Assembly: GCA_033442325.1 (NCBI GenBank)
Contig: JAWQFM010000025.1
Location: 777,215-803,639 of the forward strand
DNA length: 26,425 nucleotides
Reading direction: 5' to 3'
Origin: Salpingoeca rosetta
Taxonomy: Eukaryota > Protista > Choanoflagellata
Part shown: positions 1,880 through 20,166 of the stretch, piece by piece
How positions within the stretch are numbered: position 1 is the first letter of the stretch
Layout: each line of letters begins with the position of its first letter
Notes under the pieces: generated by a model
The model's input: only the letters and a program-made list of their open reading frames with translations
Told to the model about the DNA's origin: nothing
Database searches by the model: none
Translations under genes and position numbers: made by a program

Positions 1880-2295
1880 GCACTGTCATGTGTTCTTCTC
1901 TCTCCCGCTGGTTGAAGAGGCGCTGCTTGTTTGTTCGTTCGTTCGTTTGCTTCATTGATTTCCGAGGTGCTGTTGCCAGCCACCATCCAGTACAGAGAGC
2001 TGCACGATGACAAGTCCTTCGTGTGCATTGTGGATGACAAGCAATAAGCAATGGTCTCCCATCGCACACAGCCACGGCAATGCTTTCCAAGACCACCACT
2101 ATCCACCACCACATCTCGCCGCAGGCGAATGCGTTCTTTGCACAATCCAGCAAGAAGTAACGGCCAGGCGCCCTGCCCTCTCTGCCCAAAGTCGCGTCCT
2201 ATCCCTATCCCTCTCGCCCTCTAGCCCTCTCAAGATCTTCAACCCACCACACCCAAAGACCCAAGCCATCAAGATCATCACGATCAGCGCTGGCA

Positions 2296-2753
2296 ATGGA
2301 GACGAACCCAGGTTCTTACCACCATCGCCGTCACCGCCGTCACCACCGCCACCATGACCACGCAAGGGTCGGTGTGAACACCAGCACCGCAGACCATGAC
2401 CGCAGCAGCGCAGAGAGCTGGGAGGAAGACTCTCCATCTCCCAACGCAGCGTCGCCGCTCTTGCTTCACAACGACAACCACAGGCCACCGCAATCGCATC
2501 AACACCAAGAACAGCCGGAACACCAAGAACAGGAACCACTGCCGCGCCCCTCTTGGTGGGGAAGCTGGAAACTGAGGCAGAGGCCCTCACACCAACAACG
2601 GCGGTCGCCTGCTCCCATGCCCAGAACGTCATCATAACTGGACACAAGGATGGCAGCGTGTCGTTCTGGCGCAAGGACACGCTCGCACACATCAATACAG
2701 TGCGCGCTGCGCACACTTCATCCATCACATGCCTCGCTGTGAGCAGTGCTTGA
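2296..2753 (+). CDS. Probable N-terminal part of the WD40-TRP gene: low-complexity leader ORF from ATG 2296, plus WD40 blades 1-2a in a different frame (2553-2753)
   Basis: ATG 2296 (gcaATGG) opens METNPGSYHH...EQEPLPRP. The frame of 2553 reads TPTTAVACSHAQNVIITGHKDGSVSFW...AHTSSITCLAVSSA*, which is clear WD40 sequence. How the pieces are joined is unresolved. Confidence 0.6.
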
Positions 2754-5718
2754 GCGAACGGCAGTGTCTGGAAGCGAGGGCGGATACCTAAAACTCTGGG
2801 ACGTGGAAGCACGCAATCCTCTGCATGACGACCCAATTGCGACGCAAAATCACGCTGCCCATGCCGTCACCGCGCTGTGCATGTTACGGGGCAATCGCTT
2901 TGCATTCGCCAGAAAGGATGGGAGCATCCAACTGTGGAACATGAACATGGGTACAGATCAGCGCTTCCAAGGTCGACGCAATGCCCACATCGGAGGTGTC
3001 ACCTGCCTTGCCGTTACACCTGACGGCCAGCACCTGGTGTCGGGAGGGCGCGACTGTACCATCAGGGTCTGGCACGTTAACCACGACGATGACGGCGACC
3101 ACGGTTTGCAGCTCCGCAACCAAATCAACACACGCGGGTCCGTGCATAATCTTGCACTGGACGCAGATGGCCAGCGCATCGTGTCCGTCTCATGGTATGG
3201 CCCGCTCCTCGTGCCACAACTGTGGGCAAGCGTGGTCACATACGTTGTCTGTGTGAGTTTGGTCTTGGGCTCGGTGGCGTTGGCGATACTGCACAGCCTG
3301 TGGTGGCTGTTCCTTGCCGCGCTCACAGCCATATTCCTCTGGCTCATCACGGGCACATCGACACAAGTGCAAATGCACGATGTGGACACCGGCCGCTTGT
3401 GCACAAGCAGGGGCCTCGTTTCCTGGCTGACAGGCTTCCATAACCCACTACGCTTCACGTTCACCAGCTATGCACGCTGCACGGTTATTGATGGGTATGT
3501 GCTTGTCTTGGATGACGACGGGCAATGCACTTTCTTCACCTGGGACGACCCCATTGACCAACTCGTTAAGATCGGCGCGCTCCAGACGCGCGTGCGCGAC
3601 CAACCACCAGCTCTGTGCACCCTGTTCAGCAATGACGAACCCATGCAGCCATGTGTTATCATAAGCGGAGAGGTGCCAGCCATATTCAACATCGCAACAG
3701 CCGTCCAAGTCTTCGCCTTGCAGGCGGGTGCTGTTCGTGGGTCACAGCTGCGTTCTACTAAACGGATGTTTGAGTTTCTGAAGCAACGCGTCGTGACTGA
3801 AGGGGTATCGACACCACTCGATGATTCTCAGCTACTGGCGCGGCTCAACAATGACATGTCGGCAGAAGACTGCCTCTCGTGGGCGGAGAAGCAAGCGGAT
3901 GAGAAGAAGCCATTCTACAACGTGCTGGAAGCCCTGATCTGGAAGCACGTCGTGCACGCAAACCCGGAGCGCGCAATGACGCTTCTTGCCCAGCGGCTTG
4001 AGCTGCCCCCAGTTCCCCGCAGGCTTGTGCCGAATGGCAGCATACCTCATTCGAAAGCCTGGGTGCGACACGGTGACTTTGTAGTGTTGAGGAAGGAGGT
4101 GCTGGCGCGCGCGCTTGAAGCAGGTGCCTTGGATCGAGGTGCACAACCCCACACGCGAGCATCGCTCAGGGAGATTGAAAGGGAGATTAGGCGACAGAAG
4201 AACAAGAAGGCGGAGAGGGTTGCGACGAAAGCCCTCTTGATGGATGTGCAGCACATGACACCGCTGCTGTCCGTGCTCGTGCACAACAAGGCATCCCAGT
4301 TCTTTGAGCTGCTTGCCATTCGCGCTGCCGTTGAGCACAAGTGGCGCGCGAACAAACCCCCGTTCGTGTGCGAGGCTGTTGTGCGGGTGGTGCAGCTGGC
4401 CATGCTCGTTGCCGTCTCCGTCTCCATTCGCGACTGGGAGGAGCGGTTCCTGGTCCGCCCAATATGGGAACAGGTCCTCATTATTGCGCTGTTCGTGCTT
4501 GACTTTCAAAACATCAATTCGCTTGAACTCCGCTACGACACCACCAACAATCGGTTCAGGGGAAACATCTGGACCTTGTTCAACCTCGCGCGCATCATCA
4601 CCATGACCACGCTGCTGACTCTCCTTCTCATACCCAACGAGAACGCCCGCACCGCCCTGGCCTTCTCCGTGTTCTTCCACTGGATTGGGCTTTTCCAGTT
4701 CCTGGTGGCCTGGGACAAGACGGGGCCCGTTGTGCTCATGATTTTCAGCATTCTCAGAGACACGTGGCCGTTCATCTTGGTGCTCGCCCTGGTCGTTGCA
4801 GGGTCTACAAACGCCCTGTATGTGTTCCTGCATCAGCCCCACCCAAACCCTGCACTGGCTGCTTCGCCAAACCACGTCGCCGGCGCAACCGCCTCGGGCT
4901 GCCGCCCGGGTGTCAATGCTGCCGCCCCTGGGTTTGAAGACTTTGCGCAAGCCCTGTTCTCCACATCGCTGATGCTGCTGTTCGGGAACATTGACACGGG
5001 CATCTTTGACGTGGACGAACAAGGAGCGCCCGCGATGGTGCGCATCTTGTTTCTGCTTGTTGCTGTGCTGACGCTGGTGATCCTGCTGAACCTGCTGATC
5101 GCGGTGCTGTCAGACTCGTACGAGCGCATCCAAGCAACTTCGGCAAGGGAGCTCACGCTTGCACGTGGCATCATCGTGGACGCGGGCTACAACCACCCGA
5201 GTGCCCGGCTGCTCTTGCGCGTGCTGTATCTGCTCCACATTGTGTCGACATCGTCACCCGAGGCGTCAGATGAGGCAGTCGTCCTCATCCCCGCGAGTGC
5301 GGAGCAGCGGACGAAGGTGCGACCGGAATGGCAGGGCGCCATGCAAGAGATCAAGCATCGCATTAATGACTTGGAGGCGAAAGTTGATGGGAAGCTGAAA
5401 GAGGTGGACGACAAGCTCGACCGCCTGCTTCAACTGTTGGCTTGCGCAATCCTTGCGTCACATCACATCACATCACAAATCGCTGCAATTGTGTACCTCT
5501 TTTACACCTCGTTACGTCACATGTGTTGGTCTTTCTCGTCAGTTGATAGTTGTCACCTCACACGCACAACTTGCTCGCGCTTTTCACTTCCACGTGTTAT
5601 GTACACGTGCCACACCAAGACTCATCACACTACAACTGAGAGAAAGTGTTTTCTCCCCCCAATGCGGCAAATCCGTATCTTCAGTTTAGCACGAGCCGCA
5701 CAGACGAACATGTCATGA
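2746..5718 (+). CDS. WD40-repeat-containing TRP-family cation channel (6TM, pore loop, C-terminal coiled coil); main ORF
   Basis: WD40 repeats such as AHIGGVTCLAVTPDGQHLVSGGRDCTIRVWH; pre-S1 AIRAAVEHKW; S4-S5 FHWIGLFQFLVAWDKTGPVVLMIFSILRDTWPFILV; pore FAQALFSTSLMLLFGNID; S6 LVILLNLLIAVLSDSYERIQ (TRP signature LLNLLIA.....Y..I); coiled coil MQEIKHRINDLEAKVDGKLKEVDDKLDRLLQLL. The listed start is GTG directly after a stop, so the true 5' end is upstream. Confidence 0.9.
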   Translation: MLERTAVSGSEGGYLKLWDVEARNPLHDDPIATQNHAAHAVTALCMLRGNRFAFARKDGSIQLWNMNMGTDQRFQGRRNAHIGGVTCLAVTPDGQHLVSGGRDCTIRVWHVNHDDDGDHGLQLRNQINTRGSVHNLALDADGQRIVSVSWYGPLLVPQLWASVVTYVVCVSLVLGSVALAILHSLWWLFLAALTAIFLWLITGTSTQVQMHDVDTGRLCTSRGLVSWLTGFHNPLRFTFTSYARCTVIDGYVLVLDDDGQCTFFTWDDPIDQLVKIGALQTRVRDQPPALCTLFSNDEPMQPCVIISGEVPAIFNIATAVQVFALQAGAVRGSQLRSTKRMFEFLKQRVVTEGVSTPLDDSQLLARLNNDMSAEDCLSWAEKQADEKKPFYNVLEALIWKHVVHANPERAMTLLAQRLELPPVPRRLVPNGSIPHSKAWVRHGDFVVLRKEVLARALEAGALDRGAQPHTRASLREIEREIRRQKNKKAERVATKALLMDVQHMTPLLSVLVHNKASQFFELLAIRAAVEHKWRANKPPFVCEAVVRVVQLAMLVAVSVSIRDWEERFLVRPIWEQVLIIALFVLDFQNINSLELRYDTTNNRFRGNIWTLFNLARIITMTTLLTLLLIPNENARTALAFSVFFHWIGLFQFLVAWDKTGPVVLMIFSILRDTWPFILVLALVVAGSTNALYVFLHQPHPNPALAASPNHVAGATASGCRPGVNAAAPGFEDFAQALFSTSLMLLFGNIDTGIFDVDEQGAPAMVRILFLLVAVLTLVILLNLLIAVLSDSYERIQATSARELTLARGIIVDAGYNHPSARLLLRVLYLLHIVSTSSPEASDEAVVLIPASAEQRTKVRPEWQGAMQEIKHRINDLEAKVDGKLKEVDDKLDRLLQLLACAILASHHITSQIAAIVYLFYTSLRHMCWSFSSVDSCHLTRTTCSRFSLPRVMYTCHTKTHHTTTERKCFLPPMRQIRIFSLARAAQTNMS

Positions 5719-5951
5719 CACATGATACATCGCAAAGCGACTGCAAATGTACAAATCTGCCAGCGTACACATGACCAGCCAGACAGACACATAATGAAGC
5801 GAGACGAAAAGCAACGCGAGTGATAAGCCCTTGCACAAGCAAGCCAAATTGAAACCGCAAGCTACCAGAAACTGTGTTTGCTTGTGAGACCAGCCAGGGA
5901 TGTCTGAATCCAACCATGCGTGTGCCACTCTTGATGATCCTCGAAACTGTC

Positions 5952-20166
<14,215 letters not shown>

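What the first reader, a model, noticed from the sequence alone, without database searches (positions are those of the whole stretch)
2553..5440. TRP channel with a seven-bladed WD40 propeller in place of ankyrin or MHR domains
Seen: about seven WD40-like repeats (two partly in the upstream frame, three clear, two degenerate), a helical linker, a 6TM TRP core and a C-terminal coiled coil. Known: animal TRPA/V/C/N channels carry ankyrin repeats and TRPM carries MHR domains; none has WD40. I recall, unverified, a WD40-containing choanoflagellate class termed 'TRPW', so the class may be named but appears functionally uncharacterised. Inference: the propeller is a ligand or scaffold module of a non-animal sensory channel.
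Basis: partly seen in the sequence, partly recalled or inferred. Interest (0 to 1): 0.72.

Follow-up and report, generated by a model that had tools for sequence, protein, structure and literature searches.

The report
Known choanoflagellate TRPW channel gene
This is the Salpingoeca rosetta gene PTSG_10899, a TRP-type ion channel with WD40 repeats at its front end. It belongs to the TRPW family, which two 2026 studies named and partly characterised, and both list this exact gene, so it is not new; this copy is odd only in that its first WD40 blades are out of frame and it is barely transcribed.

Summary
The window is Salpingoeca rosetta, and the stretch is the annotated gene PTSG_10899 (100% identity).

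**What holds.** WD40 repeats and a six-helix TRP core lie in one uninterrupted 897-codon frame (2746-5436).
- Pfam gives WD40 2e-15 and Ion_trans 3e-9.
- A family profile of the membrane part hits solved TRPV channels at about 1e-37.
- Foldseek returns TRPV, TRPA, TRPC and TRPM.

**Already published.** Two 2026 studies named WD40-TRP channels "TRPW". One solved TRPW1 and showed it is a lipid-gated, Ca-permeable channel. Both list PTSG_10899. This scan has already met TRPW paralogues elsewhere in this genome.

**What does not hold.**
- A seven-bladed propeller is not shown. About 3.5 blades are confident and two are degenerate.
- The first 1.5 blades lie in another frame, without an ATG, inside annotated intron 1.
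- "Functionally uncharacterised" is out of date.

**Oddities of this copy.**
- The frame break is real in the DNA.
- A hydrophobic hairpin splits the propeller. Only the paralogue PTSG_10767 shares it.
- Transcription is nearly absent.

Verdict: already known, low interest.

The parts
2396..2555 (+). Annotated exon 1 of PTSG_10899 (frame 2), a basic low-complexity peptide. Not verified; an alternative ATG at 2296 (frame 1) gives a His/Gln-rich disordered peptide.
   Evidence: tblastn of P0001. The codon score cannot separate frames 1 and 2 here. 154 single GT-AG solutions are possible.
2565..2750 (+). Frame-0 WD40 segment: blade a plus the first half of blade b. No ATG in this frame. It lies inside annotated intron 1 (2556-2743).
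   Evidence: Pfam WD40 2e-5. Best codon score and GC3 0.70 in frame 0. Aligns to residues 135-191 of PTSG_10767 (34% identity over the 135-201 match, E=1e-7).
2748..2754 (+). Frame break (GCT TGA G) in the middle of WD40 blade b. The blade continues in frame +1.
   Evidence: Sequence. An independent 2022 DNA contig is identical over 1900-5940. The paralogue aligns collinearly across the break.
2744..3204 (+). WD40 blades b (second half), c, d and e, in the main open frame.
   Evidence: Pfam WD40 2e-15. AF2 strands have pLDDT 75-89 over residues 1-150.
3205..3363 (+). Hydrophobic hairpin: two roughly 20-residue hydrophobic stretches joined by a 2-residue turn, inserted in the propeller region.
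   Evidence: Kyte-Doolittle peak 2.49. Strongly coding-like, score 0.43 and GC3 0.79. A hairpin sits at the equivalent place in PTSG_10767. The published table counts 8 TM segments. AF2 confidence here is low.
3364..3699 (+). Two degenerate blade-like units (f, g).
   Evidence: A few AF2 strands with pLDDT below 50. Weak strands also appear at the same place in PTSG_10767. No Pfam hit.
3700..4350 (+). Helical linker and pre-S1 region, including the family-invariant Trp of the motif ...KW.
   Evidence: AF2 helices 316-417 and 450-535. W533 is invariant in alignment A2. Aligns with PTSG_10767 from residue 394 on.
4351..5124 (+). S1-S6 membrane core with pore helix and filter region (…LLFGNIDTG…).
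   Evidence: Ion_trans 3e-9. The profile hits TRPV channels at 7e-38. AF2 pLDDT above 90. Foldseek returns TRPV5/6/1, TRPA1 and TRPC4. Family motifs seen in A3.
5125..5235 (+). TRP-helix region directly after S6 (family motif LLNLLIA..SDSYERIQ, then ..ELTLARGII).
   Evidence: One continuous AF2 helix 762-816. Aligned to the TRPV1 IWKLQR region. Motif conserved in A3.
5272..5435 (+). C-terminal beta-strand (VVLIPAS) and a coiled-coil-type helix.
   Evidence: AF2 strand E843-849 and helix H864-896. Conserved ...VLIP... and WQG motifs in A3.
5436..5689 (+). Annotated intron 2 (GT..AG). Non-coding in every frame. Sparse + strand RNA reads cover it at the same depth as the exons.
5690..5774 (+). 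Annotated exon 3 (27 codons plus stop). It overlaps the 3' end of the convergent minus-strand gene, whose poly(A) site is at 5672. Not verified.

Best explanation
The stretch is Salpingoeca rosetta gene PTSG_10899 (EGD80221), one of 17-18 paralogues of the published TRPW family. TRPW proteins are type-I TRP cation channels whose cytosolic N-terminus is made of WD40 repeats instead of ankyrin or MHR domains.

**Shown here**
- One 897-codon open frame holds WD40 blades, a hydrophobic hairpin, a helical linker, S1-S6 with a pore helix, a TRP-helix region, a C-terminal beta-strand and a coiled-coil-type helix.
- The membrane core is homologous to TRPV, TRPA, TRPC and TRPM.
- Its nearest relatives are other WD40-TRP proteins.

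**Inferred from TRPW1**
- The protein would form a tetrameric, Ca-permeable, non-selective cation channel.
- It would be gated through a lipid or ligand pocket between S1-S4, the S4-S5 linker and the TRP helix.
- The propeller would be a cytosolic docking surface rather than the ligand site.

**Specific to this copy**
- The first 1.5 ancestral blades are now out of frame and have no start codon, so the present protein most likely starts after them and carries an incomplete, partly degenerate propeller.
- The gene is almost silent under the culture conditions sampled.
For: **Identity**
- 100% match to PTSG_10899.

**Published membership**
- Supplementary table S3 of 10.64898/2026.06.15.732245 files PTSG_10899 as TRPW by both similarity network and tree, with WD40=1, Ion_trans=1 and 8 TM segments.
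- Data S4 of 10.64898/2026.06.15.732144 lists it among the TRPW genes.

**Own tests**
- Pfam WD40 2e-15 and Ion_trans 3e-9.
- The exhaustive search found 383 relatives. The nearest are the S. rosetta paralogues PTSG_08286 and PTSG_10767 and a Microstomoeca transcript, all WD40 plus Ion_trans, together with the SLOG-bearing PTSG_11274, which lacks WD40.
- About 14 paralogous loci in the same genome.
- The family profile hits TRPV-type channels at 7e-38 to 1e-31. Foldseek top hits are TRPV5/6/1, TRPA1 and TRPC4/5.
- AF2 pLDDT is above 90 over S1-S6.
- Family motifs are conserved.

**Mechanism by homology**
- TRPW1 data.

**Frame break and truncated N-terminus**
-.

**Low expression**
- 0-3x depth against 40-160x for the neighbouring genes.
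- 'no test' in the published differential-expression table.
Against: - Channel activity of this paralogue has never been measured.
- The TRP-box tryptophan is not conserved (ELTLAR where TRPV1 has IWKLQR).
- The S3 family motif WNWLD has diverged to WTLFN.
- The N-terminal frame breaks and the near-silence fit a copy on its way to loss.
- The 5' and 3' exon structure is unverified. No spliced reads were seen.
- AF2 gives no confident fold for residues 152-390.
Confidence: 0.9

Rival explanations
1. The locus is a dying paralogue, a young pseudogene of the expanded TRPW family, and makes no working channel. The long open frame is only what is left shortly after inactivation.
For: - The frame break at 2748-2754 is real in the DNA, and there is no ATG in the frame-0 WD40 piece.
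- A second frame change near 2550 is needed if the ATG at 2296 is the ancestral start.
- RNA depth is 0-3x against 40-160x in the neighbouring genes, and the published expression table says 'no test'.
- The family evolves by lineage-specific expansion and loss.
- The S3 motif and the TRP box have diverged.
Against: - The remaining 897 codons are open, with coding-type codon usage throughout, and the pore, S6 and TRP-helix motifs are conserved.
- Both lesions fall in the first roughly 14% of the gene. Two random lesions would do so about 2% of the time (my inference). This suggests selection still keeps the channel body.
- Many ATG-started spliced frames into the body are possible.
Confidence: 0.25
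2. The out-of-frame blades are still decoded. A programmed +1 ribosomal frameshift at GCU UGA G, with non-AUG or spliced entry into frame 0, would give a protein with the full set of about seven blades.
For: - A +1 shift exactly at the in-frame TGA restores a textbook WD40 blade. Its strand spacing matches PTSG_10767 (8 against 9 residues between ..LA and VSGS).
- The frame-0 piece keeps coding-type codon usage.
- The break is not a sequencing error.
Against: - Frame 0 has no ATG between its upstream stop and the break, so a second unusual event is needed.
- No stimulatory element was looked for or found, and no RNA or protein evidence exists.
- Retained codon usage is equally expected for a recent 1-base insertion.
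- Frameshift lesions are common in expanded receptor families.
Confidence: 0.05
3. The WD40 part and the channel part are two neighbouring genes wrongly merged by the gene model or by the reader.
For: - The annotated 5' exon is doubtful.
- RNA coverage is too thin to show one continuous transcript.
Against: - Blades b-e, the hairpin, the linker and S1-S6 lie in one frame without a stop for 897 codons.
- The same fusion occurs in S. rosetta paralogues and in a transcript-derived, complete Microstomoeca protein, in the 184 taxa reported in the literature, and in the TRPW1 cryo-EM structure.
- The upstream gene's poly(A) site is at 2007, so nothing else fits in between.
Confidence: 0.02

Closest known systems
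TRPW1 and the TRPW family of Salpingoeca rosetta (Coyle et al., bioRxiv 10.64898/2026.06.15.732144; TRP survey bioRxiv 10.64898/2026.06.15.732245 and PNAS 2026, PMC13663828)
   Same: - N-terminal WD40 repeats, pre-S1, S1-S6, TRP helix and C-terminal coiled coil.
- Same species, and the same published gene list (PTSG_10899 is in it).
- Shares the family motifs ...KW (pre-S1), TGP..MI, LLNLLIA..SDSYERIQ and WQG.
   Different: - It is not TRPW1: functional TRPW1 residues are numbered up to 1063, and this protein has 978 residues.
- The propeller is incomplete or degenerate rather than seven clean blades.
- A hydrophobic hairpin splits the propeller.
- The first blades are out of frame.
- It is almost untranscribed and was never tested functionally.
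PTSG_10767 (EGD79782 / XP_004988731.1), S. rosetta paralogue
   Same: - The only other family member found with the same layout: a disordered Gln/His-rich N-terminus, 4-5 WD40 blades, a hydrophobic hairpin, two weak blades, a linker and the channel.
- Both are counted with 8 TM segments in the published table.
   Different: - PTSG_10767 is intact in one 1254-codon frame with a normal ATG.
- Only 25% identity over 523 aligned residues (linker to C-terminus), and the membrane domain is more diverged (26% in A3).
Animal TRPV channels (TRPV1, TRPV5/6, Inactive/Nanchung)
   Same: - The closest solved relatives by sequence and by fold, from pre-S1 to the TRP helix, including a C-terminal beta-strand.
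   Different: - No ankyrin repeat domain (no Ank hit); WD40 repeats instead.
- C-terminal coiled coil, as in TRPA and TRPM.
- The TRP-box Trp is not conserved.

Membership tests
TRP superfamily, type I (TRPV/A/C/M-like) | Six-helix voltage-gated-like membrane domain with a pore loop, homologous to TRP channels rather than to Kv, Nav or CNG | tested here: met
   The profile of 17 relatives hits only TRPV-type chains among the 60 best, at 7e-38 to 4.5e-31. For the single sequence, TRPV1 scores 5e-8 against Nav at 1e-3. Foldseek returns TRPV5/6/1, TRPA1, TRPC4/5 and TRPM.
TRP superfamily, type I (TRPV/A/C/M-like) | TRP helix directly after S6 | tested here: met
   AF2 gives one continuous helix, 762-816, running from S6 into the TRP-helix region. 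HMMER aligns it to the TRPV1 TRP-box stretch.
TRP superfamily, type I (TRPV/A/C/M-like) | Conserved TRP-box tryptophan (WKxQR-like) | tested here: not met
   ELTLAR aligns where TRPV1 has IWKLQR. The family consensus is E..L.RA.I. This trait varies among TRP families, so it does not exclude membership.
TRPW | Membrane domain groups with the TRPW clade | tested here: met
   The nearest relatives in an exhaustive search are TRPW-type proteins at 1e-28 to 1e-49, far ahead of animal TRPs. The published network and tree both file PTSG_10899 as TRPW, and it is in the list. I built no tree with animal outgroups myself.
TRPW | N-terminal WD40 repeats on the same polypeptide as the channel | tested here: met
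   PF00400 2e-15 and PF00520 3e-9 in one open frame. AF2 gives beta-blades at residues 1-150.
TRPW | Closed seven-blade beta-propeller, as in the TRPW1 structure | tested here: inconclusive
   About 3.5 blades are confident and two are weak (pLDDT below 50). A further 1.5 are out of frame. The intact paralogue models as 4 good blades, the hairpin and about 2 weak blades.
TRPW | C-terminal coiled coil | tested here: met
   AF2 helix 864-896 with a 3-4 hydrophobic spacing read from the sequence. It aligns with the coiled-coil region of relatives but is shorter. Oligomerisation itself was not tested.
TRPW | Ligand-gated, Ca-permeable cation conductance | not testable with these tools
   Shown only for TRPW1. 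This paralogue has not been assayed.
TRPV (animal) | N-terminal ankyrin repeat domain | tested here: not met
   No Ank family appears among the Pfam hits at E up to 1. The published table gives Ank=0.

The most novel reading that the evidence does not exclude
PTSG_10899 and PTSG_10767 may form a structurally distinct TRPW subtype in which a membrane hairpin is inserted into the WD40 propeller. That would give eight membrane segments and tether the propeller to the bilayer. In PTSG_10899 the first blades might also be rescued by a programmed +1 frameshift at GCU UGA G rather than being lost.
Probability: 0.1. Interest if true: 0.5.

Novelty: already known. Interest (0 to 1): 0.15.

Why it matters
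TRPW channels matter because they are an ancient sensory receptor family, lost in animals, that helps explain where animal somatosensory TRP channels came from. That point has already been made and published in 2026, with this gene in the lists.

What this locus could add is small:
- It may be an example of birth-and-death evolution inside an expanded receptor family (N-terminal decay, near-silence).
- Together with PTSG_10767 it may be a subtype with a membrane hairpin inside the propeller. The papers record this only as '8 TM domains'.

Tried and rejected
1. **Word-index search with the channel part.** It returned only the protein itself. The exhaustive search was needed.
2. **RNA reads to settle the exon structure.** Depth over the gene was 0-3x, with no joints and no reads at all over 2845-3519, so introns 1 and 2, the transcript start and the hairpin could not be tested.
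3. **Hairpin as an unannotated in-frame intron** (GTGTGA at 3251 to AG at 3367, 117 nt). Rejected: it has the best coding score and GC3 0.79 in frame 1, and an equivalent hairpin sits in the single-exon paralogue.
4. **A mini-intron across the frame break** (GT at 2739 to AG at 2754, 16 nt). Rejected: it is far too short, and it would leave only 3 residues between two blade strands where the paralogue has 9.
5. **Sequencing error at the break.** Rejected: an independent 2022 DNA assembly is identical over 1900-5940.
6. **Extra WD40 exons further upstream.** Rejected: the upstream gene's poly(A) site is at 2007, and tblastn finds no WD40 signal before 2565.
7. **A 75-sequence alignment.** It failed in the tool, so a 35-sequence one was used.
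8. I did not build, search or fold a protein joined across the frame break or across exons; the pieces were searched apart by reference. The annotated spliced protein was used only as the database returned it (P0001).
Full report
**Where we are**

The window is from the choanoflagellate Salpingoeca rosetta. The 990-codon open frame at 2746-5718 matches the NCBI protein 'hypothetical protein PTSG_10899' at 100% identity (P0001, 978 aa).

Mapping P0001 back onto the window gives the annotated model:
- exon 1: 2396-2555
- intron 1: 2556-2743
- exon 2: 2744 to about 5435
- intron 2: 5436-5689
- exon 3: 5690-5771, followed by the stop codon

Poly(A) tails in RNA reads mark the end of the upstream + strand gene at 2007. 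They mark the end of the convergent minus-strand gene at 5672. The gene therefore has to fit between about 2010 and 5800, and there is no room for further WD40 exons upstream.

**Checking the observation**

Pfam finds WD40 (PF00400, 2e-15) and Ion_trans (PF00520, 3e-9, residues 578-798) in the same open frame. It also finds WD40 (2e-5) and EML-type propeller (1e-6) in the 66-residue piece at 2553-2750, which is in a different frame.

For the membrane part:
- As a single sequence it hits solved TRPV1 at 5e-8, ahead of every non-TRP channel.
- A profile of 17 relatives hits Inactive, TRPV6, TRPV5, TRPV3, TRPV1 and TRPV4 at 7e-38 to 1e-31, over profile positions 12-350. That spans pre-S1 to the TRP helix.

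An AlphaFold2 model of 2746-5436 with a 35-sequence alignment gives:
- pLDDT above 90 for S1-S6
- a continuous S6-TRP helix (762-816)
- a C-terminal beta-strand (843-849)
- a terminal helix (864-896) whose hydrophobic residues follow a 3-4 spacing

Foldseek returns TRPV5/6/1, TRPA1, TRPC4/5 and TRPM, and for the front end Fbw7-type WD40 proteins.

So WD40 repeats, a linker, a 6TM TRP core and a C-terminal coiled-coil-type helix are all real.

**The seven blades**

Read by eye, and by alignment to a paralogue, there are seven blade-like units:
- a, and the first half of b, in frame 0 (2565-2750)
- the second half of b, then c, d and e, in the main frame
- a roughly 50-residue hydrophobic hairpin
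- two degenerate units, f and g

Only residues 1-150 of the translatable frame, about 3.5 blades, are modelled with confidence. Residues 152-390 are below pLDDT 50.

The frame-0 piece has these properties:
- It has no ATG and ends at a TGA (2751-2753).
- It sits inside annotated intron 1.
- It still carries the best coding score and a GC3 of 0.70 in frame 0.
- It aligns to residues 135-191 of the paralogue P0125 (34% identity over the 135-201 match, E=1e-7). That paralogue then continues in the main frame from residue 193.

An independent DNA assembly from 2022 is identical over 1900-5940, so the break is not a sequencing error. I enumerated 154 single GT-AG introns that give an ATG-started frame into the channel body, and none can include the frame-0 blades.

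The simplest reading is that the first 1.5 ancestral blades were lost to a small insertion or deletion. If the ATG at 2296 was the ancestral start, a second frame change near 2550 is also needed. 'Seven-bladed propeller' is therefore not confirmed for the present protein. I did not construct or fold a sequence joined across the break; the pieces were searched apart.

**What it is**

The word-index search with the channel part found only the protein itself. The exhaustive search found 383 relatives. The closest are listed below; searches support the identifications.

| Protein | Identity | E-value | Domains |
|---|---|---|---|
| P0121 | S. rosetta 'Nudt9 protein', evidently the SLOG-bearing PTSG_11274 | 1e-49 | SLOG + Ion_trans (no WD40) |
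| P0122 | Microstomoeca roanoka transcript, complete | 7e-46 | WD40 + Ion_trans |
| P0124 | EGD77193 = PTSG_08286 | 1e-41 | WD40 + Ion_trans |
| P0125 | EGD79782 = PTSG_10767 | 3e-28 | WD40 (Ion_trans not among the 25 Pfam families shown; membrane domain aligned) |

A six-frame search of the organism's own genome finds about 14 further loci.

Shared motifs tie this protein to that group:
- pre-S1 ...KW
- TGP..MI
- the pore ..LLFG..D
- LLNLLIA..SDSYERIQ
- ..VLIP..
- WQG

Two motifs have diverged. The S3 motif WNWLD reads WTLFN here, and the TRP-box Trp is replaced.

**Comparison with what is known**

Two bioRxiv papers of June 2026, one of them also in PNAS in October 2026, name exactly this class TRPW.

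The survey paper finds 18 S. rosetta proteins in a monophyletic clade within group-1 TRP channels, 14 of them with WD40 propellers. Its supplementary table S3 lists PTSG_10899 as TRPW by both network and tree, with WD40=1, Ion_trans=1, Ank=0 and TM_domains=8.

The second paper defines 17 TRPWs. For TRPW1 it shows:
- It is a Ca-permeable, non-selective, ruthenium-red-sensitive channel.
- It is activated by a bacterial mono-unsaturated branched fatty acid.
- Its structure has a seven-blade propeller, a TRP helix and a coiled coil.
- The agonists sit in a vanilloid-like pocket in the membrane domain.

Its Data S4 lists PTSG_10899 (EGD80221) with 'no test' for differential expression. I read that as too few reads. 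It fits my own 0-3x depth, against 40-160x for the neighbouring genes.

Its statement that the class is uncharacterised is out of date. The idea that the propeller is the ligand module is not what TRPW1 shows. Earlier follow-ups in this scan reached the same verdict for other TRPW paralogues of this genome.

**How it most likely works**

Shown: one polypeptide with WD40 blades, a hairpin, a linker, a TRP-type S1-S6, a TRP helix and a coiled-coil-type helix.

Inferred from TRPW1 and type-I TRP channels:
- four subunits form a domain-swapped cation pore
- the acidic filter region (..GNIDTG..D) passes Ca and monovalent cations
- gating is driven from the pocket bounded by S1-S4, the S4-S5 linker and the TRP helix
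- the cytosolic WD40 part and the coiled coil hang below the membrane as an assembly or docking platform

Whether this particular copy still works is open. In favour of function:
- The channel body has 897 open codons with coding-type usage and conserved core motifs.
- Both frame lesions fall in the first roughly 14% of the gene. For two random lesions that would happen about 2% of the time (my inference).

Against function are the near-silence and the broken N-terminus. I put about 0.6 on a working channel, 0.25 on a young pseudogene and 0.05 on recoding of the break.

**The hairpin**

Residues 154-206 (3205-3363) form two hydrophobic stretches joined by a two-residue turn. I first suspected an in-frame retained intron, from GTGTGA at 3251 to AG at 3367. 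Two things argue against that:
- The segment has the strongest coding signature of the whole gene.
- PTSG_10767, which is a single 1254-codon frame, has a hairpin at the same place. AlphaFold2 models it as two helices between four good blades and about two weak ones, though at low confidence.

Among the 30 long relatives carrying the S6 motif (a screen that misses PTSG_10767, whose S6 reads LLSMLIA), only three have a strongly hydrophobic segment far upstream of S6, and none shows this WD40-hairpin layout. The two hairpin genes are the two TRPW rows seen with 8 TM domains in the excerpt of the published table that I read. This is the one feature that might deserve a closer look.

**Ends of the gene**

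The stretch 5437-5690 looks non-coding in every frame. It has a GT..AG pair with a pyrimidine tract. The few + strand reads cover it as deeply as they cover the exons. Annotated exon 3 also lies within the 3' end of the convergent gene. The true C-terminus is therefore unsettled: either the 27 annotated codons or read-through to the TGA at 5716. This does not matter for the classification.

**Verdict**

The object is an already published member of a named family. Interest is low. The residual novelty lies in the frame break and the hairpin subtype.

Noticed in passing
window 2748-2754 (context 2565-2800): A frame break (GCT TGA G) lies in the middle of a WD40 blade. The upstream half-blade and one more blade are in frame 0, inside annotated intron 1. 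They are still coding-like and collinear with the paralogue PTSG_10767. The break is real in an independent DNA assembly. It is either a recent 1-base lesion or, less likely, a +1 recoding site.
   Followed up: partly
window 3205-3363; P0125 residues 328-388: A hydrophobic two-helix hairpin is inserted between WD40 blade 5 and two degenerate blades. Only the paralogue PTSG_10767 shares it. Both are counted as 8-TM TRPWs in the published table, which does not comment on it.
   Followed up: partly
window 2007 and 5672: Poly(A) addition sites are seen in RNA reads. A well-expressed + strand gene ends at 2007. The convergent minus-strand gene (the large RasGEF-type gene of note s1-444816) ends at 5672, inside annotated intron 2 of PTSG_10899. 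Annotated exon 3 (5690-5771) therefore overlaps that gene's 3' end.
   Followed up: partly
window 2296-2555: The annotated first exon (ATG 2396, frame 2) encodes a basic, low-complexity peptide. An alternative ATG at 2296 (frame 1) gives a His/Gln-rich peptide more like the disordered N-terminus of PTSG_10767. Codon usage cannot separate the two, and no spliced reads exist.
   Followed up: partly
window about 1780-1875, 5968-6220, 7050-7109: There are long dinucleotide (CA/GT) and trinucleotide microsatellites in the intergenic and flanking regions. They give long poly-Cys/Val or poly-Asn/Gln pseudo-ORFs in the ORF listing.
   Followed up: no
P0098 / P0270 (ENA and Logan contigs, organism unknown): An environmental protein has about 13 WD40 repeats, a PKD_channel-annotated membrane domain and the same S6/TRP-helix motif (LLNLLI..L.DSYER) plus a coiled coil. 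This is a TRPW-type architecture outside choanoflagellates, in line with the published wide distribution.
   Followed up: no
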